64,000 nucleotides of DNA from Botryllus schlosseri (Eukaryota): positions 15,748,001 to 15,812,000 of the forward strand of contig CM119386.1 in the NCBI GenBank assembly GCA_051294905.1, written 5' to 3'. The notes under the pieces are model-generated. The model saw only the letters and a program-made list of their open reading frames with translations, was not told where the DNA came from and made no database searches. Shown here in pieces: positions 12,912 to 45,921 of this stretch (its first letter is position 1; the number at the start of each line of letters is the position of its first letter). The position numbers and the translations under genes were made by a program.

Positions 12912-15900
12912 TTCATGAGTACAATTTAACATGATATGATGGTATATCTTATAAGTGTATGTGTGCGCAAGAGCGACCCACAATAGGTAGAAAGTTCCTG
13001 CCACTGTCCATGTCAGGTTTGATAGACTTGTGCACAGCCAATGATCTATAAATGATTGTTCACAGCATATACTTTGTATGGTCATTAAATTGTAATGTTG
13101 TCCATGTCCAGTCCAGTTTGTCAACTCTTACAACCATAGTTGACTTGCAAGATGGTGACTTCGAAGAATGGGACGGAATAGAGACTATCCAACAATTCCC
13201 TTCACTCAACAAATCTCCGAACTTACACATCACCATCTATTCCCTCAACGGTCGAGGTGATCATGGAAGAAGTTGGTCGAATCCGAGCATCATAACAATG
13301 TGCCATCGCATGGGTATTACAGAAGCAGGATTTTGAACAGCTTAAATACCTCACCTCTTCATGGACTCCTAAATGCTCTGATACTAGTCGTGTCTAAATT
13401 TCAATGAGGATACCAACACCATAATATAATTGAGAATTTTATACAGGGTATGGATATTTCATTTACTATAACACTTGAAAACTGCATAAACAACTTTTGT
13501 TATCATGTCAGACTTGTTGTCATCTAAATTCAGAATAACGAGAACCAAAATCCTAGTCAACGGAAAGCATTCAAGTCAAGTGAATATCTAGCAAAAGAGG
13601 ATTTTCATGTTTATGCAAATTACAATATCAGATATACCTATGTTTAAGCCATTTGATAATTGTACTGTCTGCATCTATTTTTGTTGTAATTTATGAAACT
13701 GTGCTGTGGTATTATGAACAATCGAATAACTGTGCCTAGTAGTTGATAACGTCAATGTTTCTTGTCACGTAACAAAAATATATATTCTCAAATGTTATTT
13801 TTTCGAGCTTTCTTATCCTCTCTTAATGACAATAACAGGACAGCAGTTGGATGGTAGAGCAGCGATCTCACATGACGTTGGACATCGGAGGGCATTCAAG
13901 CATCAAGTACCATGGCATTTGAACACTAGTATGTTTCAAGCCGTTCAGTCAGTTCATAGTCGTTCAGCAAGATTATTTTTCTCTCCATCAATCGATCCAA
14001 TGAGTATCAATCCAATTCGGCACCATTCGTCAAAGTATTATTCATTTTGACTACAATCTTTGGAAATATCTCAATGTCTGAAGCAAAGTGGAACATGACA
14101 TGGTTGCTTCTCATGGACGGCCTGGCGTGCCGAAATCCCATAAGATAATGATTTGCACTTTTATTAAGATCCCTGAATCCTTTTCAATTTCCTCGCGGCT
14201 GTGGGTTGCTTTGCGGCTGTTTCGATACACGAACAATTTTTTCTTGAAAGTTTGAATGGACTATAATTTATAAAAAATGTTAACGATCCTGTAAAAAAGT
14301 TATGCATTAGACATTTACAGAATGGGAATTTCTTATGTCACAGTTTTGCCTGTCAACTACAATTGAAATCAAGTTATTTATTCAATCCGTCAAGTATGTT
14401 CCGTACTGCCGCATATGCAATATATATGAGCAATATGCATATTCAAGAGAGAGATTTTGCATTGGATGATTGTGGAGTTACATTGCTGGAAAAATAACCT
14501 GAGTATTTGAGGCAGCAGCACATACAATGCAAGTTGATGCTCATGCTCAGGTCATAAAGCGTGATGCAAATGGCGAAAAGTTATGAAGGTTATACATAAA
14601 AAACCATAGACGTACACACTATACAATGACGAAGGTTACAAAATCATTTCCTAACCTTTCAATGAATAAGACACCATATAATGTTGCTCGCAAATGCATA
14701 AATCATCTATTTTGTACAATCCTTCCAGCTATCAATCTTAACGAGTACTCCATGTTAATTTTCAAGGTTTACAGGCAATTCATGGGGAACACTTCACAAC
14801 GGGTAGTTCATATCAAAGAAGTGCCAAAACGTTTACCAGGTATATTTTGAATAAATGGGCATTGGTAGACGCTTTCGGACACCCCGGTGTGAAAGATTCA
14901 ACTATTGAGAGTAGTACGACATATCACGCCAGGTCGATGTGCACAATACCAACTATGGAGTGATTATCCTCAATGTCATTCTAGTGCATTGTTTTGCCGA
15001 TGGAATATTGTTTGGAACAATGCCGATTCTCATTATTCATGTGGATTGAACGGCCTGACCCGGTAAAAAGTTATATCTGTTAGCATTTTACCAATCAGTA
15101 CAATGTTAGTTTCCGGTTAGTTCCGATTTTATATTATATTATGAAGGTACAATCGCTATACTGATACTATGGTTGCCAGTGAACTCGGCCCTACAATATT
15201 ACAACATATACTATATAAAACAACTTAGTTGCTCACACAATTATCGTAATCAACCCTTCTATTTAAAAAAATCAGGTGACATAAATGCTGCCAGAATATT
15301 TTAAAATCCTCTTTTAACAATCCTTCTAGCTTCTGCACATCTATATTGACGCTCACCCACAGTATCTATTAATTTTTTTGGCTGTGTCGTACATGCATGG
15401 TTGCAACCGATGCTAAAATGCCTCACAGCTAGTCGGTACTTTGATAAATGTGCATTGTTAAAAGTTATATTACATCCTAGTATGCAGCACTGCCTCACTA
15501 TGCTCAAGAATCCAACAAAAACTAAACCAATTGGGGAAAAGCAGTGAATTAGTACCCCAGAAAGGTCGATTGCAGCACTCCCCCACAGTCGACATACGCA
15601 ATTCCGTACCTCTACTCAAGCATATCCCGCGACGGACTGATTTCGCCGGGAATCTATCTTATAGCGTTAAGGGGCGTGGCAGTTTCCAATCATTGTATGT
15701 ATATATATCATTGCTGTTGCCCTAGTATAATTACCTTGCTGGTCGAGGTTCGGTTGTACGCCATACCGGTACTGCACTGATTGTAATGTGCTAGGAGTCG
15801 ATTGGTGATGATTATAACGCGTTTGCGGAACATGACACTTTTTAAATTTTTATGGTCGCAAAAGTTATTTATAGAAGATAATCTATAAGTTATTATTGGC

Positions 15901-16119
15901 CTACTTCACCAATCACGGCCACGGATCGCCTCTCTCGCTCGTCATATGTTGACGCCACTGTGCTATATGACGCACGTACAAAACAACTACCCGGTAAAAT
16001 TCCCCGGTATATGAATGGGTTTATCCAAACAGGATATTTTTTACGGTACTTCGCCATTGAAGTTATAAAAGTGGTTACGGTATATCAAGAATGCTCAGGC
16101 AACGTGAAAGATTGAAGAG

Positions 16120-19100
16120 ATGGAGCAGCAGTAAGTGTATTTTGATTATCTTATGTATCAAATATACTAGCTCAGCGAATTAATTTGATAATGCTGTTGA
16201 ATTGTTCATCAATGATATTCGTAGGATGCTGTGAAACTGATATTGGCGTAACTTCTTTTAATGTAATACTGTAATCCAAGACTTTCACTGGCATATTATA
16301 AGCCAATGAAATGTGTAAATGGGCCTGGGTCTGAGCCTGAGGGAAAGCAAAACACTTAATCACCCATGATATTTTTTTACAGATATTACTGTCTCATACT
16401 TGCATTCCTTGTTCTCATAACTTGTGATGGTGTAAAAGGAGTAATTTCAACAGAAGATAGAAGAGCTATTGCGTTGCAGTACATGCCGGTAAGAACAAAT
16501 GATGAAAACGTTTGAAGCAATATGGGTATTAAAATCGACCGTAGCTACAAGAAATCTTGATTGAAAAATCAGTCATAAAAAATTCGTTACATTGCAGGAA
16601 ATTGATCAAGAGAGATTGGAGTGTAAGCTTGGGCAGTTCTACTCATACGAAACTGAAACTTGCAAGTCTTGTTACCGTAACTGTGGAGACAGCGTAGACC
16701 TTATCTCATGCGGATTTGAATGTCAAAGTAAGATGCTACAGCTACATATATTGCATAGCACAGATATCAGAACAGGCCTATTGTTTTATACATGGATTCT
16801 GTATGCACCTTGGAAGTTTGCGCAGAATGACATAGCATGACAAATAAATTATAATGAATTCAGGCCTAGGTCTTATAATCCCGCATCTCAATTCCAAGTT
16901 CATGTACTTATTTGTTGTGCGAATTGGAGAAATATTCTCTAGTGCAGATCTTCAAAATCGAAACAACAGCCACTCTCACAAAAAATATTTGAAATTTTGA
17001 ATTTGCAGCTCCACTGATCAAAAATGAGTTACTTCAAAAGTTCACTGGGAATTGACTCTGTTCATAGCAGTCTCGGAATACTGTTTGACTCGCTTTTGAC
17101 CATGCAATCATTGACACGCTTTCTTGTGAGAACATCTCCAAAATGCCTTCGTACTGTATTGAAAATGTGACTTCAAAATTGATGCGTAATGGATTGAAAA
17201 TGTAGTTTCTGCCGTAGCTGTTCTACAATTATACATTTTGGCGATGTCACAGTAAAGAGGACACGAGTGTAGTGATTACTAGTATATTACATTTTAAAAA
17301 TGCATTGCTGTCACCTGTCACCATTCCAGTATGGCATTTTATTGTTTTGTCAAAATGGAAGCATTATATTATAGTGTTTTGGCAATATGTAAAACACACC
17401 TGGATGCTTGATATTGTGCATAAATCATTCTGTGCTCCTCTCCGACTCTTAATGGTAGTCGCAAGACTATCAATGGCCGTTGTTACCAGCAGGCATTATA
17501 CTGGATCCGATGCTAATAATACAAAAATGACATACCTATTTGTACGTTAACAGGTTACTTTGCAATAGTGAACCTCACAGCCAAACTGCACGAACAAGAA
17601 TCCGTTTATCATGTTAATGCCAGCAAAAGCGAACAAAAAGAACAGGTAAGCTACTCCCCGGGTAGTGTGTTGCATTAATTTTCTTTCCACTTCTCTCTAA
17701 GCTCTCATACGAATGAAACGACTCGTCTACTTCTGTAAATCATTAGTTTTTGGGCTTTGCTTGTATCACTTTTGACTCATTCCATTATAATTTAGCAAAT
17801 TTTTTGACATTTGTAATGCAGGCTGTCAGACTTGTCCAATATTTACAAATGTTGTTCTTTAATGAATTCCAAGTGGATTACAAAAAACAAAATTGAAAAA
17901 TTTCCAACTGTTCAAAAGATAATTGGATTCTAAATTCAAAAAACTTTTATTTGCAATTGTTGATTGCTTAAAATAGTATTTACGGTGAGCAGCAGAGACC
18001 AGCTGTTCACCGTAAATACTGTTTTAAGCCATGAATAATCTGAAAGACCATATTTTTTTGAGATTTTATGAAGGAATAGATTGCACTTCGAAAATCCAAT
18101 TTTATATTAACCATACTGCTTCAAAGTACATTTTGCAATAATTTTTTTTTGTGGAAACTGAACACCACATGGATTTTCAAGTCCGCCCCCCTCCCAATTT
18201 TTTTCATCCGTAACTTTTTTTTCATTGAGTTTAGAGCAAAAAAGTTGATTTTTTCCAATTCCTTGGCCCCAGAATTGTATAATTAGACATTTTAATTGGT
18301 TCTCCACCATCAATTTAAGTAAAAAATATCGATTCCACCATCAATTTAAGCAAAAAATATCGATTTTAAAGATTTTTTGCATGCAGCGCCACCTAATGAC
18401 AAGAGAATTTTGAATCGCATTATCTTTTGAACCGTTGAAAATTTTTCAATTTTGTTTTTTGTAATCCACTTAGAATTCATAAATGAACAACATTTATAAA
18501 TATTGTACAATTCTGAGGGTATGCATTACAGCCCTTGCTAAATTATACTGGAATTAGCCTTTTGTTAGTGAAAATGATCATATCAAATGGACAAAATTGC
18601 TACTGTATCATGGTAGTGGGATATATTTTCGAAAATTGCTCTGCTTATGCAGTCCTAAGTCATTTTGCGTTGTTGCGAGGGTACATCTTGCAATTTAAAA
18701 AGTAACCCGCCTCCAATTTACTGCTAAAAATATGCGACATTTCGGCTAAACGTACTTTTCAAAACTGAATCGAGTACTTTTTACATCTTTCATTATCTAC
18801 CTCTGTCCGAGTAGCGATGCTGACTACTTTAACCACCTCTGACAGCAATGAAATTAGTTACTTTTGTCTCTGGCTTCTCAGTCCTGGCTACAACACGTCA
18901 CGACAAATTTTAATGATAAACATCGTCGGCCCAAGTTAGTTCAACAATACTCGGGATATTTGAACTGGACTGCTTCCTAGCTCGGTTTAGCGATTTGATT
19001 GGAATGGAAGCGATCGAATCTGCACAATTCACTTTTTGATAACGGAATTTATCAAATAAGGAATCTGCCTTGTCCTTGAGGTGACTAGTTTTATGAAAAA

Positions 19101-19383
19101 TCAATGTGATAACATTAGCGGTAGCGTACACACCATAGTTCTATGAGATCGTTTGATTCTTTTCTCCACAGACATATTTGTTCTATTACAGGAGCTTATC
19201 GGACAAATCACTACCTGGCGGGGAGTTGCGGCTGGCATTTTTATGGTTTTTGCAGTCATCACAATCATATTGCTGGTGTGCTTGGTGAAATCAAAAAGGC
19301 GTTATGCGAAATTACGAAAGAGTAGACTAGGAATACCGTTTAGTGATGAAGTGGGATATAGTAATCGCGCAACTGGAGCATGA
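16120..19383 (+). CDS. Single-CRD TNF-receptor-like type I membrane protein, paralog 1 (BCMA/TACI/Fn14-type), 176 aa; exons 16120-16130, 16383-16488, 16598-16727, 17554-17645, 19192-19383
   Basis: All four introns are GT-AG with consistent phases (2,0,1,0). Translation gives a signal peptide (YYCLILAFLVLITCDGVKG), CRD CKLGQFYSYETETCKSCYRNCGDSVDLISCGFEC (C-x12-C-x2-C-x3-C-x8-C-x3-C, the BCMA spacing), a stalk with NLT and NAS sequons, TM (GVAAGIFMVFAVITIILLVCLV) and a short basic tail. Confidence 0.85.
17812..18530. mobile_element. MITE-like element with ~100-bp imperfect inverted termini, in intron 4 of receptor paralog 1
   Basis: 17815-17910 is a diverged reverse complement of 18440-18530 (gaattccaagtggattacaaaaaacaaaattgaaaaattt). 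Confidence 0.6.
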
Positions 19384-19466
19384 GAGGAAACTGTGCAGTC
19401 TCTGTAACTCTATTGTAATAGAAGTGAGATTTAGCTATGCCTGCAAGCAGTGAAGCCTGCTTTAAC

Positions 19467-19896
19467 ATGTAATTACTAGGGCAAGTTTTTGCAACTTTTG
19501 CAACTTTTTTTACAGCTTCCAGCAGCTTCCTAAATACTCGTAAGATATGTAGAATGCTGTTTTAAGCTGTTTGAAGGAATCTTATAGTGCAACTTTTTGC
19601 AACTTTTGTCCATTTTTTTCATGCAACTCTTTGCAACATTTTGCAACTTCTTCGGTTTTCATGAAAGTATTTTTGGTTTTGGTGAAATACACGGCCAAAT
19701 TCGACTGAAACACCGTAAATGAGCACCGAAGTACGGGTATTTCGGGAGCTGAGCCGGTAAATTGACCTTTTTTTTTAGTCAACCGAGCAAAATGTGGTCT
19801 TTTAGTGCAACTTTTACAAGTTTTGTCAAAAATAAATAAATAAATGCAACTTTCCGCGGATTTAACTGCAACAAAAACTTGCCCTAGTAATTACAT
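19467..19896. mobile_element. MITE (~430 bp) with TIR ATGTAATTACTAGGGCAAGTTTTTG
   Basis: Perfect ~25-bp inverted termini and internal (g/t)gcaacttt repeats; the TSD boundary is ambiguous. Confidence 0.7.
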
Positions 19897-44799: not shown

Positions 44800-45921
44800 A
44801 TGGCAAAGATGATGCATCGAATTGTGCGATTATTGATGCTGTTCGCGTTGAGCCAAGCGAGGACTATTACCAACCGAATTAGCGTCGACGAGTTTCAACA
44901 AAGCTTCGTGCAAACACAAAAGGTATCGGTAAATTATTACTCAATAGATGTAGCCATGGCGTACCAGCGACCAGCGTATTATCATGTAGCCTACGTACGT
45001 ACATTGTATAATGCATAGTACAGTACAGTACATCCGCTAAATTGACGTTCAGTTGGATATGGGATATGATTATGAATTGATCATTCCACACAGGCCCTTA
45101 TCGACATCGGAAACAGATGCGTGACGGAAGAGTTTTTTGATTTGGAATTAGAAACTTGCAAGAACTGCGAGACGCACTGTCCCGACAACCTATGTGGGCA
45201 ATGTAGAGGTGAACTGCTGGTTTAGAATTTAACTATAACTGAGTTGTCCGCGAGCTCGTGTTCTGCATTTCAACAGTGTATTTTTTGGAGAAATTATCCA
45301 GTGAACAGATGCGAAGGTTGGATGCCAGAATCCTCCTACTCGAAAAAAATGTGAGTCGAATAGGCCGAATAGTGACCTTCGCAAACCTAACGGGCTTAAG
45401 CTACAGAAGACTGTTGAAGAAATTAAGGGTAAACCGCAGTTATTTAATCTATGAGATCGAAGTTTATCCCGTTTGTCACTGGACAATATATATTTGAGAA
45501 GTCAAATCACTATTGTAATGTAATTGCATATTGTCGACCCGGGGTTACGCCACAGCCTTCCTTGCTTTCTCCATGACGATCCGAAGGAAATAGTTCATTT
45601 GTATGATTGCAGACAAACGAGACGTGGCAATGGGCGGCAATAATAGCTATAACGCTGGTGATGTTCGGGACAGCAGTAATTTATTTCGCCTGGAGAAAAT
45701 GCGGTAAAACGAAGCAGTGCAACTACGGGCAGAGGAGAACTGCAGCCGTGCAAACGCAGCGTTCCCTTGAAGGATTGACTGTAGTTTGTCATCCCGCACA
45801 ATTTGTTCAGCCGAACAGAGGTAGGGATGGTACAACCTCCCCTAGACGATACGTCACGCTACAATATGAGACTCAGCATGGATACGAAATGGAGACTGCT
45901 ACATCAACTGATTCCGTCTGA
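44800..45921 (+). CDS. Single-CRD TNF-receptor-like type I membrane protein, paralog 2, 206 aa; exons 44800-44922, 45094-45208, 45277-45350, 45613-45921
   Basis: GT-AG introns with phases 0,1,0, matching paralog 1. Signal peptide MAKMMHRIVRLLMLFALSQA; CRD CVTEEFFDLELETCKNCETHCPDNLCGQC (six Cys, FD as in BCMA YFD); stalk exon VYFLEKL.. parallels SYFAIVNL..; TM WQWAAIIAITLVMFGTAVIYFAW; cytoplasmic tail without a death domain. Confidence 0.87.

What the first reader, a model, noticed from the sequence alone, without database searches (positions are those of the whole stretch)
16120..19383. Invertebrate receptor with exact BCMA cysteine spacing
Seen: a single CRD with C-x12-C-x2-C-x3-C-x8-C-x3-C, a signal peptide, a TM segment and a ~30-aa tail with no death domain or clear TRAF motif. 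Established: this is the spacing of human BCMA/TNFRSF17; BCMA, TACI and BAFF-R lack signal peptides, while single-CRD Fn14 has one. Inference: a member of the BAFF/APRIL/TWEAK-receptor-like clade in an animal presumably without B cells, possibly a decoy or sorting receptor.
Basis: partly seen in the sequence, partly recalled or inferred. Interest (0 to 1): 0.72.

Follow-up and report, generated by a model that had tools for sequence, protein, structure and literature searches.

The report
Small single-domain TNF-receptor-like gene, tunicate
This is a real, spliced and expressed gene for a tiny cell-surface protein whose single cysteine-rich domain looks like those of the smallest TNF receptors (BCMA, TACI, Fn14, fly Grindelwald). 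It belongs to an unannotated five-gene cluster in what is probably a sea-squirt genome, and neither its ligand nor a direct kinship with BCMA has been shown.

Summary
Observation confirmed. A five-exon GT-AG gene (16120-19383, +) encodes 176 aa: signal peptide, one six-cysteine domain with C-x12-C-x2-C-x3-C-x8-C-x3-C, a glycosylated stalk, a TM helix and a 31-aa tail. All four junctions appear in RNA assemblies, one also in raw RNA reads.

Interpretation partly supported. Pfam finds nothing. A family profile run against all PDB sequences returns only BCMA and TACI (E 0.05-0.5). Foldseek, VIA-align and the ESM Atlas rank BCMA, TACI, BAFF-R, Fn14 and Grindelwald first, all at non-significant scores. 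A profile-profile match (96.9%) links the family to single-CRD receptors that score on TNFR_c6 just under its cut-off.

The "exact BCMA spacing" is not a family trait. The two closest paralogs have x9, and two diverged ones have x4/x2. This gene lacks the DxL ligand-binding hairpin motif. With cysteines fixed, the remaining residues add little similarity to BCMA (p about 0.055).

The only named relative is an uncharacterized Styela clava protein with identical CRD-exon boundaries.

Best reading (0.6): a tunicate lineage of small TNFR-type receptors for one of the genome's TNF ligands. The scan had noted this stretch and one paralog on this window, not on other DNA.

The parts
16091..16130 (+). 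Transcribed 5' end containing an upstream ATG (16091). After splicing to exon 2 it opens an out-of-frame 25-codon uORF that overlaps the main start codon.
   Evidence: The X1 contig reaches 45 nt upstream of the 16130 donor. uORF translation.
16120..16130 (+). Coding exon 1: ATG plus 8 nt (MEQ + 2 nt). Donor is GTAAGT.
   Evidence: Junction 16130>16383 in an RNA contig.
16383..16488 (+). Exon 2: hydrophobic signal peptide and the start of the mature chain (..YYCLILAFLVLITCDGVKGVISTEDRRAIALQYMP).
   Evidence: Junctions. The homologous exon is present in both close paralogs.
16598..16727 (+). Exon 3: the whole cysteine-rich domain. It starts in phase 0 eight residues before Cys1 and ends in phase 1 one codon after Cys6.
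   Evidence: The exon has the same boundaries and phases in the Styela clava homologue and in the diverged paralog.
16622..16723 (+). Six-cysteine core CKLGQFYSYETETCKSCYRNCGDSVDLISCGFEC (C-x12-C-x2-C-x3-C-x8-C-x3-C). The model predicts a beta-hairpin between Cys1 and Cys2, then a short helix.
   Evidence: AF2 model with pLDDT 72, strands at 13-16 and 21-24, helix at 25-29. Fold and profile matches.
17554..17645 (+). Exon 4: stalk (S)YFAIVNLTAKLHEQESVYHVNASKSEQKEQ. It is Q/E/K-rich, probably helical, and has two N-glycosylation sequons.
   Evidence: The YF/FF + xISNLTxxLQxQE stretch is conserved in paralogs.
19192..19383 (+). Exon 5: the rest of the stalk, the TM helix (19222-19287, GVAAGIFMVFAVITIILLVCLV), the 31-aa tail KSKRRYAKLRKSRLGIPFSDEVGYSNRATGA (19288-19380) and the stop codon.
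   Evidence: Junction 17645>19192 in an RNA contig and in 2 raw RNA reads.
44800..45921 (+). Diverged paralog in the same window: 4 exons, 206 aa, with signal peptide, CRD (C-x12-C-x2-C-x3-C-x4-C-x2-C, hairpin EEFFDLELETC), heptad-like stalk, TM and a 76-aa tail.
   Evidence: Its CRD exon hits Pfam BCMA-Tall_bind at E 0.001, 19.5 bits, below the 27-bit cut-off.

Best explanation
The gene encodes a small type I membrane receptor of the TNF-receptor superfamily with a single cysteine-rich domain. The domain has a beta-hairpin 'A1' module followed by a four-cysteine module, as in BCMA, TACI CRD2, Fn14 and, more loosely, Drosophila Grindelwald.

It belongs to a lineage-specific family that current domain models do not recognise. 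There are five genes within about 185 kb of one chromosome, plus one detectable orthologue in the ascidian Styela clava.

Inferred mechanism:
- The hairpin-plus-helix domain sits in the groove between two protomers of a trimeric TNF-family ligand. The genome encodes about six such ligands, including a tandem pair closest to APRIL/BAFF and an EDA-like ligand with a collagen stalk.
- Three receptors bind per ligand trimer.
- The Q/E/K-rich, probably helical stalk may help clustering.
- The short, fast-evolving tail either recruits an adaptor or only drives internalisation. This copy carries a membrane-proximal YAKL tyrosine motif.

Shown: the gene, its splicing, its architecture, purifying selection, and the TNFR-type resemblance of the domain.

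Inferred: ligand binding, stoichiometry and the signalling output.
For: - Gene model and RNA junctions.
- Family: two close paralogs (CRD 67-69% identical) and two diverged ones on the same contig, all on the + strand with the same exon plan.
- Selection: dN/dS among the three close copies is 0.10-0.17, so the ectodomain is under purifying selection. All cysteines are kept in the expressed alleles.
- Orthologue: Styela clava XP_039251465 has the same cysteine spacing. It hits only this cluster when searched back against the 495-Mb genome (E about 1e-4), and its CRD exon has identical boundaries and phases.
- TNFR link by sequence: hhalign of the family against the CRDs of P0002/P0007/P0008 gives probability 96.9%, E 1.3e-10, over 36 columns. 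Those proteins match Pfam TNFR_c6 at E 6e-6 to 4e-4.
- The family profile against 177,635 PDB sequences returns 12 hits at E <= 10. All are BCMA or TACI, ungapped over all six cysteines.
- TNFR link by fold: the top 16 Foldseek PDB hits are TACI, BCMA or Grindelwald. The same holds for the top 18 with a model of the Styela orthologue.
- VIA-align against 48,161 chains returns only three with Z >= 2: BCMA, BAFF-R and Fn14.
- The ESM Atlas shape search puts BCMA and TACI clusters first (TM 0.54-0.57, rmsd 1.7-2.4 over 31-32 residues), with a Grindelwald cluster further down at TM 0.50.
- Ligands exist in the genome.
Against: - No single comparison is significant: PDB profile E 0.05-0.5, Foldseek E 0.5-3, VIA Z 2.0-2.1.
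- VIA found nothing at Z >= 2 for the Styela model.
- Pfam TNFR_c6, BCMA-Tall_bind, TACI-CRD2 and the Fn14 model do not hit this gene at E <= 10. A genome-wide TNFR_c6 scan does not pick up the cluster.
- The bridging proteins themselves lie under the TNFR_c6 gathering score (27 against 29.4 bits).
- The models are shallow (7-9 sequences, pLDDT 68-72), and the second half of the domain is poorly predicted.
- Sequence-aware structure tools partly re-read the cysteine pattern, so these lines of evidence are not independent.
- Furin-like cysteine repeats also appear among the weak fold hits, over the first 22-29 residues.
- No TRAF motif or death domain is present, and the tails are not conserved between paralogs.
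- No binding test could be run.
Confidence: 0.6

Rival explanations
1. It is a true co-orthologue of the vertebrate BCMA/TACI/BAFF-R (and perhaps Fn14) lineage. On this reading it serves as receptor for the tunicate EDA/APRIL/BAFF-type ligands, so the APRIL/BAFF receptor module would predate B cells.
For: - BCMA and TACI are the only PDB sequences the family profile finds, and they are the first rows of the Atlas shape search.
- This gene and the Styela protein have exactly BCMA's cysteine spacing.
- The diverged paralog's hairpin EEFFDLELETC lines up with BCMA's NEYFDSLLHAC and gives the only Pfam hit in the family: BCMA-Tall_bind, E 0.001.
- The tandem ligand pair on C14 has APRIL and BAFF as its best or only PDB matches.
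- Marin 2026 (PMC12843592) places tunicate TNFSF-T2/T3/T4 next to the vertebrate EDA/TNFSF13/13B group.
Against: - The spacing is not conserved in the family: x9 in two copies, x4/x2 in two others.
- This gene has no Asp at the DxL position.
- With cysteines fixed, BCMA's other residues score above shuffles only at p about 0.055.
- All hits are below curated cut-offs.
- It has a signal peptide, unlike BCMA, TACI and BAFF-R.
- The ligand matches are weak (single-chain E 0.06-0.4), and TNF-alpha scores equally for one of them.
- No phylogeny or synteny was possible. The only neighbour marker tried, an Eph receptor host gene in Styela, is not shared.
Confidence: 0.15
2. It is not a TNF receptor. 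On this reading it is a lineage-specific small membrane protein whose cysteine-rich module is a generic hairpin-plus-CxxC knot of furin-like, EGF or laminin type. It would match BCMA's spacing by convergence and bind something other than a TNF ligand.
For: - Pfam gives no hit.
- The language-model atlas returns only low-score furin-like, VSP and GF_recep_IV clusters.
- PCSK5/6, Fur2, EGFR and laminin repeats appear among the weak Foldseek AFDB hits.
- All TNFR matches are statistically non-significant and largely driven by cysteine positions.
Against: - The furin-like matches cover only residues 9-30, whereas the TNFR matches span the whole domain.
- Furin-like repeats occur in tandem arrays, not as one domain on a signal peptide-TM scaffold.
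- hhalign gives 96.9% to TNFR_c6-positive single-CRD receptors of the same architecture.
- Four structure libraries and one sequence library independently put small TNFRs first.
Confidence: 0.22
3. It is a decaying or non-functional duplicate whose transcripts are noise.
For: - Expression is very low.
- An upstream out-of-frame ATG lies in the mRNA.
- The expressed alleles differ at 7 nonsynonymous against 7 synonymous sites.
- The tails are not conserved between paralogs.
Against: - The frame is intact across five exons with consensus splice sites, and the transcripts are correctly spliced.
- dN/dS is 0.10-0.17 against paralogs at saturated dS.
- All six cysteines and the exon plan are kept in alleles, in paralogs and in Styela.
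Confidence: 0.03

Closest known systems
BCMA (TNFRSF17) and TACI CRD2 (TNFRSF13B), vertebrate APRIL/BAFF receptors
   Same: - A single functional CRD of about 35-40 residues: hairpin (Cys1-Cys2) followed by C-x2-C-x3-C-x8-C-x3-C.
- The spacing is identical to BCMA's in this gene and in the Styela homologue.
- They are the only PDB sequences found by the family profile.
- They are the top fold matches.
   Different: - This protein has a signal peptide, while BCMA and TACI are type III.
- There is no DxL motif in the hairpin (FYSYE).
- The tail has 31 aa and no recognisable TRAF site.
- The spacing is not conserved among its own paralogs.
- Pfam BCMA/TACI models do not reach their thresholds.
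- Orthology is not shown.
Fn14 (TNFRSF12A), the TWEAK receptor
   Same: - This is the best match in overall architecture: signal peptide, one six-cysteine CRD, TM and a tail of about 30 residues in a very small protein.
- It is one of only three PDB chains with VIA Z >= 2.
   Different: - By my recollection of the Fn14 sequence (not taken from a tool), its cysteine spacing is x12, x2, x2, x8, x2.
- No PIEET-type TRAF motif is present.
- The Pfam Fn14 model gives no hit.
Drosophila Grindelwald (and Wengen), invertebrate single-CRD TNF receptors (PMC8024323; bioRxiv 10.1101/2024.07.27.603686)
   Same: - A type I protein with signal peptide, one CRD carrying the CxxCxxxC signature, in an animal without adaptive immunity.
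- Grindelwald structures rank 7th and 14th in Foldseek, and a Grindelwald cluster appears in the Atlas search.
- Lineage-specific tandem expansions of such receptors are reported in annelids and molluscs.
   Different: - Grindelwald has eight cysteines (an X2 hairpin with two disulfides plus a C2 module) and a much longer cytoplasmic domain.
- No sequence-level hit was found.
- The cited survey did not cover tunicates.
Styela clava LOC120328943 (XP_039251465), 'uncharacterized protein'
   Same: - The same cysteine spacing.
- CG[FI]EC followed by x-YF.
- The same CRD-exon boundaries and phases.
- A reciprocal match to this cluster only.
   Different: - CRD identity is only 35%.
- It has a roughly 70-residue extension before the CRD and a 57-aa tail.
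- Stalk, TM and most of the tail sit in one exon.
- It is a single copy at its locus, nested in an Eph receptor gene.

Membership tests
TNF receptor superfamily (TNFR/NGFR cysteine-rich domain) | Recognised by the curated CRD profile (Pfam PF00020 TNFR_c6) at or above its gathering score | tested here: not met
   No hit at E <= 10 for the CRD exon. The genome-wide PF00020 scan finds other loci but not this cluster.
TNF receptor superfamily (TNFR/NGFR cysteine-rich domain) | Six-cysteine domain with an N-terminal hairpin module (Cys1-x10-14-Cys2, aromatic residue in the first strand) followed by CxxC and a second two-disulfide module | tested here: met
   C-x12-C-x2-C-x3-C-x8-C-x3-C, with an invariant Phe and Thr-Cys. 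The AF2 model shows the hairpin plus helix. The disulfide pairing of the second module is not resolved.
TNF receptor superfamily (TNFR/NGFR cysteine-rich domain) | Detectable homology to accepted TNFR CRDs | tested here: inconclusive
   hhalign gives 96.9% probability to CRDs of P0002/P0007/P0008. These match TNFR_c6 at E 6e-6 but at 27 bits, below the 29.4 cut-off. Direct PDB and fold matches are all to small TNFRs but non-significant.
TNF receptor superfamily (TNFR/NGFR cysteine-rich domain) | Binds a trimeric TNF-family ligand | not testable with these tools
   The ligand TNF-homology domains are split over exons, so no unaltered reference existed for complex prediction. No annotated ligand protein was found.
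BCMA/TACI/BAFF-R (APRIL/BAFF receptors) | Cysteine spacing of the BCMA A1-D2 domain | tested here: met
   Identical in this gene and in Styela. It is not conserved in the four paralogs, so it is not a family character.
BCMA/TACI/BAFF-R (APRIL/BAFF receptors) | DxL motif at the tip of the ligand-binding hairpin | tested here: not met
   The hairpin is QFYSYETET, with Ser at BCMA's Asp position in the alignment register. The diverged paralogs have F[FY]DLEL.
BCMA/TACI/BAFF-R (APRIL/BAFF receptors) | Match to Pfam BCMA-Tall_bind, TACI-CRD2 or BaffR-Tall_bind | tested here: not met
   None at E <= 10 for this gene. The diverged paralog scores 19.5 bits against a cut-off of 27.
BCMA/TACI/BAFF-R (APRIL/BAFF receptors) | Similarity beyond the cysteines | tested here: inconclusive
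   BCMA scores 12.4 bits on the family HMM. Cysteine-fixed shuffles score 4.5 +/- 4.4, and 109 of 2000 reach the real score.
BCMA/TACI/BAFF-R (APRIL/BAFF receptors) | Type III topology (no signal peptide) and TRAF-binding sites in the tail | tested here: not met
   An N-terminal hydrophobic leader is present and conserved in the paralogs. By inspection, the 31-aa tail contains no PxQE/PxExx motif.
Fn14 (TNFRSF12A) | Signal peptide + one CRD + TM + tail of about 28 aa | tested here: met
   The architecture matches.
Fn14 (TNFRSF12A) | Fn14 CRD profile or spacing, and a PIEET TRAF motif | tested here: not met
   No Pfam hit. VIA gives Z 2.0 with rmsd 4.7 only. The spacing differs at two positions, and no PIEE-like motif is present.
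Grindelwald | Eight-cysteine X2 + C2 domain | tested here: not met
   There are six cysteines, with one disulfide possible in the hairpin. Module definition is taken from PMC8024323.
Grindelwald | Single CRD with the CxxCxxxC signature on a type I scaffold | tested here: met
   C-KS-C-YRN-C. The signature is as stated in bioRxiv 10.1101/2024.07.27.603686.

The most novel reading that the evidence does not exclude
The C16 cluster is the tunicate counterpart of the vertebrate BCMA/TACI/BAFF-R(/Fn14) receptors, and its members bind the tunicate EDA/APRIL/BAFF-type ligands. [quoted passage not shown]
Probability: 0.15. Interest if true: 0.72.

Novelty: new member of a known kind. Interest (0 to 1): 0.45.

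Why it matters
[quoted passage not shown] Their TNF ligands have just been catalogued: Marin 2026 (PMC12843592) places some next to EDA, APRIL and BAFF.

I found no paper in the library describing their small receptors. The only database relative of this gene is labelled 'uncharacterized', and domain models miss the family altogether.

The cluster therefore gives concrete receptor candidates for testing two questions. Did the minimal one-domain TNF receptors of vertebrates (BCMA, TACI, BAFF-R, Fn14) and of insects (Grindelwald, Wengen) share an older origin? What did such receptors do before adaptive immunity?

It also shows that counts of TNF receptors in invertebrate genomes based on Pfam TNFR_c6 are underestimates. 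If binding is not confirmed, the finding shrinks to one more lineage-specific cysteine-rich membrane protein family.

Tried and rejected
- **Pfam on each exon:** nothing relevant.
- **phmmer of the CRD against PDB sequences:** nothing.
- **ESM Atlas by sequence features:** only low-score generic cysteine-rich clusters.
- **Profile search of 1.84 billion representative proteins:** four hits. Two were low-complexity repeats (P0001, P0004). The window's own protein is not in the library.
- **The search for homologous proteins:** with the Styela protein it found only itself. With P0002 it found two unnamed relatives. With a ligand exon it found nothing.
- **P0002 searched back against the genome:** it hits only this cluster, weakly, so it comes from another organism.
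- **VIA-align on the Styela CRD model:** no chain at Z >= 2, so the VIA result for the window's model was not replicated.
- **Synteny through the Eph receptor gene that hosts the Styela homologue:** this genome's Eph receptor exons lie on other contigs.
- **Complex prediction:** not run. Every TNF-homology domain in the genome is split over at least two exons. A spliced ligand has no reference, and I did not type long sequences.
- **Full-length protein:** for the same reason, the full-length 176-aa protein was never submitted to a search or fold; only its exons were.
- **Bacterial promoter/terminator scan:** irrelevant to a eukaryotic gene.
- **'RRYxxL shared tail motif' and a sorting role:** rejected as a family feature. 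The two close paralogs and Styela lack the motif.
Full report
**1. What is there**

Reading 15900-19600 and assembling the open pieces gives a five-exon gene on the + strand:

| Exon | Coordinates |
|---|---|
| 1 | 16120-16130 |
| 2 | 16383-16488 |
| 3 | 16598-16727 |
| 4 | 17554-17645 |
| 5 | 19192-19383 (stop included) |

- Every intron is GT..AG, with strong donors (GTAAGT, GTAAGA, GTAAGA, GTAAGC) and pyrimidine-rich acceptors.
- The joined frame is open for 176 codons.
- The protein has a hydrophobic leader (MEQQYYCLILAFLVLITCDG).
- Next comes one cysteine-rich domain lying wholly in exon 3: CKLGQFYSYETETCKSCYRNCGDSVDLISCGFEC, that is C-x12-C-x2-C-x3-C-x8-C-x3-C.
- A Q/E/K-rich stalk follows, with two N-glycosylation sequons.
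- Then come a 22-residue TM helix and a 31-residue tail, KSKRRYAKLRKSRLGIPFSDEVGYSNRATGA.
- The cysteine pattern occurs once in the six-frame translation of the whole window.

**2. Is it transcribed and spliced as modelled?**

Yes.
- A 383-nt contig of run X1 joins 16130>16383, 16488>16598 and 16727>17554.
- The last junction, 17645>19192, is in another X1 contig and in two raw reads of the RNA-seq run X10. Their first mates lie on the - strand, as expected for a + strand mRNA.
- Coverage is very low.
- The contig extends 45 nt upstream of the first donor, so it contains an ATG at 16091. After splicing, that ATG opens an out-of-frame 25-codon uORF overlapping the start codon.
- The expressed alleles differ from the assembly at 14 coding positions: 7 synonymous and 7 nonsynonymous, none touching a cysteine.

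**3. It is one of a family**

A six-frame search of the 495.5-Mb assembly with the CRD exon finds relatives only on the same contig:

| Copy | Position | CRD identity to this gene | Cysteine spacing |
|---|---|---|---|
| This gene | window 16120-19383 | - | x12, x2, x3, x8, x3 |
| Close paralog | 69 kb downstream (C16:15833169) | 67-69% | x12, x2, x3, x9, x3 |
| Close paralog | 82 kb downstream (C16:15846641) | 67-69% | x12, x2, x3, x9, x3 |
| Diverged paralog | window 44800-45921 | 34% | x12, x2, x3, x4, x2 |
| Diverged paralog | C16:15947790 | 39% | x12, x2, x3, x4, x2 |

- All five are on the + strand.
- All share the plan leader exon / CRD exon / stalk / TM-tail. The CRD exon begins in phase 0 eight residues before Cys1 and ends in phase 1 one codon after Cys6.
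- Among the three close copies dN/dS is 0.10-0.17, so the ectodomain is under purifying selection.
- The tails are short but unrelated in sequence. The YAKL motif of this copy is absent from the two close paralogs, which share SHP[ST]GD instead.
- BCMA's exact spacing is thus a property of this copy and not of the family.

**4. Relatives elsewhere**

- A profile of the five CRDs, scored by HMMER against 1.84 billion representative proteins, gave only four hits at E < 0.001. It did not return the window's own protein, so this genome's gene is not in that collection.
- Two of the four hits are low-complexity repeats.
- P0003 is Styela clava XP_039251465, 'uncharacterized protein LOC120328943'. 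It has a hydrophobic N-terminal segment (probable signal peptide), a roughly 70-residue extension, a CRD with the same x12/x2/x3/x8/x3 spacing followed by E-YF, a TM helix and a 57-residue tail.
- Searched back against this genome, P0003 hits only the three close cluster members.
- Its CRD exon has exactly the same boundaries and phases.
- This is good evidence for orthology of the family between two ascidian-grade genomes.
- Other agents' notes on this genome also call it a tunicate. I did not verify the species.
- P0002 is a 229-residue protein from a transcriptome assembly of an unknown organism. It is also signal peptide, one CRD, TM and tail, and it and its two relatives match Pfam TNFR_c6 at E 6e-6 to 4e-4, just under the gathering score.

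**5. What kind of domain is it?**

Direct Pfam searches are blank. Three indirect routes agree.

(a) Profile-profile comparison. The family against the P0002-type CRDs gives 96.9% probability and E 1.3e-10 over 36 columns, from before Cys1 to Cys5.

(b) PDB sequence search. The family profile against all 177,635 distinct PDB sequences returns twelve hits at E <= 10. Every one is BCMA or TACI, aligned without gaps over all six cysteines, but E is only 0.05-0.5.

(c) Fold searches with an AlphaFold2 model of the exon. The model has pLDDT 72, with a hairpin at 13-16/21-24 and a helix at 25-29; its second half is poorly defined.
- Foldseek against the PDB: the first 16 hits are TACI, BCMA and Grindelwald.
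- VIA-align against 48,161 chains: only three reach Z >= 2, namely BCMA, BAFF-R and Fn14.
- ESM Atlas by shape: BCMA and TACI clusters come first (TM 0.54-0.57, rmsd 1.7-2.4 over 31-32 residues), with a Grindelwald cluster and an arthropod TNFR_c6 cluster lower in the list.
- The two AlphaFold DB libraries give the same families mixed with furin-like repeats that cover only the first 22-29 residues.
- A model of the Styela CRD repeats the Foldseek ranking: the top 18 are BCMA, TACI and Grindelwald. It gives no VIA match.

**6. How much is that worth?**

- None of these scores is significant by itself.
- They are not independent, because all of them, AlphaFold included, read the cysteine pattern.
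- With the cysteines fixed and BCMA's other residues shuffled, 109 of 2000 shuffles score as well as real BCMA on the family HMM. So the non-cysteine similarity to BCMA is marginal.
- This gene's hairpin (QFYSYETET) lacks the Asp-x-Leu motif through which BCMA, TACI and BAFF-R grip their ligands (motif as described in PMC8024323).
- The two diverged paralogs do have F[FY]DLEL in BCMA's register. One of them gives the only Pfam hit in the family: BCMA-Tall_bind, E 0.001, 19.5 bits, against a cut-off of 27.

My conclusions:
- The domain is very probably a TNFR-type CRD of the minimal hairpin-plus-helical-module kind.
- The architecture is closest to Fn14 and Grindelwald (signal peptide, one CRD, short tail).
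- A specific clade relationship with BCMA, TACI or Fn14 is possible but not shown.

**7. Context for a mechanism**

- The genome encodes TNF-homology-domain exons at about six loci.
- A tandem pair on C14 has APRIL and BAFF as its best or only PDB matches. Single-chain E is 0.06-0.4, and TNF-alpha ties for one of them.
- An EDA-like gene on C11 is preceded by collagen repeats.
- The genome also has about five canonical TNFR_c6 receptor loci.
- Marin 2026 (PMC12843592) reports that tunicate TNFSF-T2/T3/T4 group with vertebrate EDA/TNFSF13/TNFSF13B, and that ligand numbers change quickly between tunicates.
- Single-CRD receptors that bind TNF trimers 3:3 are established in Drosophila (PMC8024323). 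A preprint that did not sample tunicates proposes them as the predominant mode in invertebrates.

The most likely mechanism is therefore as follows.
- The hairpin and following helix insert between two protomers of a TNF-family trimer.
- Three receptors are gathered per trimer, possibly aided by the heptad-like stalk.
- The short tail then passes the signal to an adaptor or simply removes the ligand by endocytosis.

None of these steps could be tested here. The ligands' domains are split between exons, no annotated ligand protein was retrievable, and so no admissible input for a complex prediction existed.

**8. Verdict**

- The reading 'TNFR-like single-CRD receptor of the BCMA/TACI/Fn14 structural type' is the best available (about 0.6).
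- The claim of membership in the BAFF/APRIL/TWEAK-receptor clade, and the weight put on the exact spacing, go beyond the evidence.
- It is a new, unannotated member family of a known kind of receptor.
- It is of moderate interest because of where tunicates sit in the tree, and because it supplies candidate receptors for the recently catalogued tunicate TNF ligands.

Noticed in passing
window 17812-17937 / 18405-18530 (and 17938-18057): Intron 4 holds a MITE-like insertion. It has 126-nt inverted arms, 88% complementary and 467 nt apart, plus an adjacent 56-nt hairpin. RNA contigs from other copies pile up on the arms.
   Followed up: partly
window 19418-19800: A high-copy repeat starts about 40-90 nt after the stop codon. 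Summed contig depth reaches thousands in run X1, with many variants and loose ends. It may lie within or just beyond the 3' UTR.
   Followed up: no
window 44800-45921: This is a diverged paralog of 206 aa in 4 exons. Its hairpin EEFFDLELETC aligns with BCMA's ligand-binding hairpin and gives a sub-threshold Pfam BCMA-Tall_bind hit (E 0.001). Its 76-aa tail ends in TDSV.
   Followed up: partly
G000:C16:15833169, 15846641 and 15947790 (loci L002/L008, L003/L009, L004/L010): Three further cluster members lie outside the window. The two close ones share a tail motif, SHP[ST]GD, that this gene lacks.
   Followed up: partly
G000:C4:25962555-25963923 (L023): The last exon of a TNF ligand and a canonical multi-CRD TNF receptor gene lie within about 1.2 kb of each other on opposite strands, as a convergent ligand-receptor gene pair.
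   Followed up: no
G000:C11:924061-927195 (L007): This is an EDA-like TNF ligand. Gly-X-Y collagen repeats sit immediately upstream of a TNF-homology exon whose best PDB matches are ectodysplasin-A (E 4e-4).
   Followed up: partly
G000:C14:22020078-22045026 (L005, L006, L020, L021): Two TNF ligand genes lie in tandem about 20 kb apart. Their closest solved relatives are APRIL and BAFF, at weak scores.
   Followed up: partly
L022 (Styela clava OZ123518.1, 10350400-10373459): The Styela homologue is nested inside an Eph receptor tyrosine kinase gene on the opposite strand. This nesting is not shared by the window's genome.
   Followed up: yes
P0002, P0007, P0008 (transcriptome assemblies; L011): This is an unnamed family of single-CRD TNFR-like type I proteins from unknown organisms. 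They share a strongly conserved tail (IIYNPVY .. EEPRYVE .. STFQSTSALPLLQSQNSENIY .. DYVYLESN). The family is absent from this genome.
   Followed up: partly
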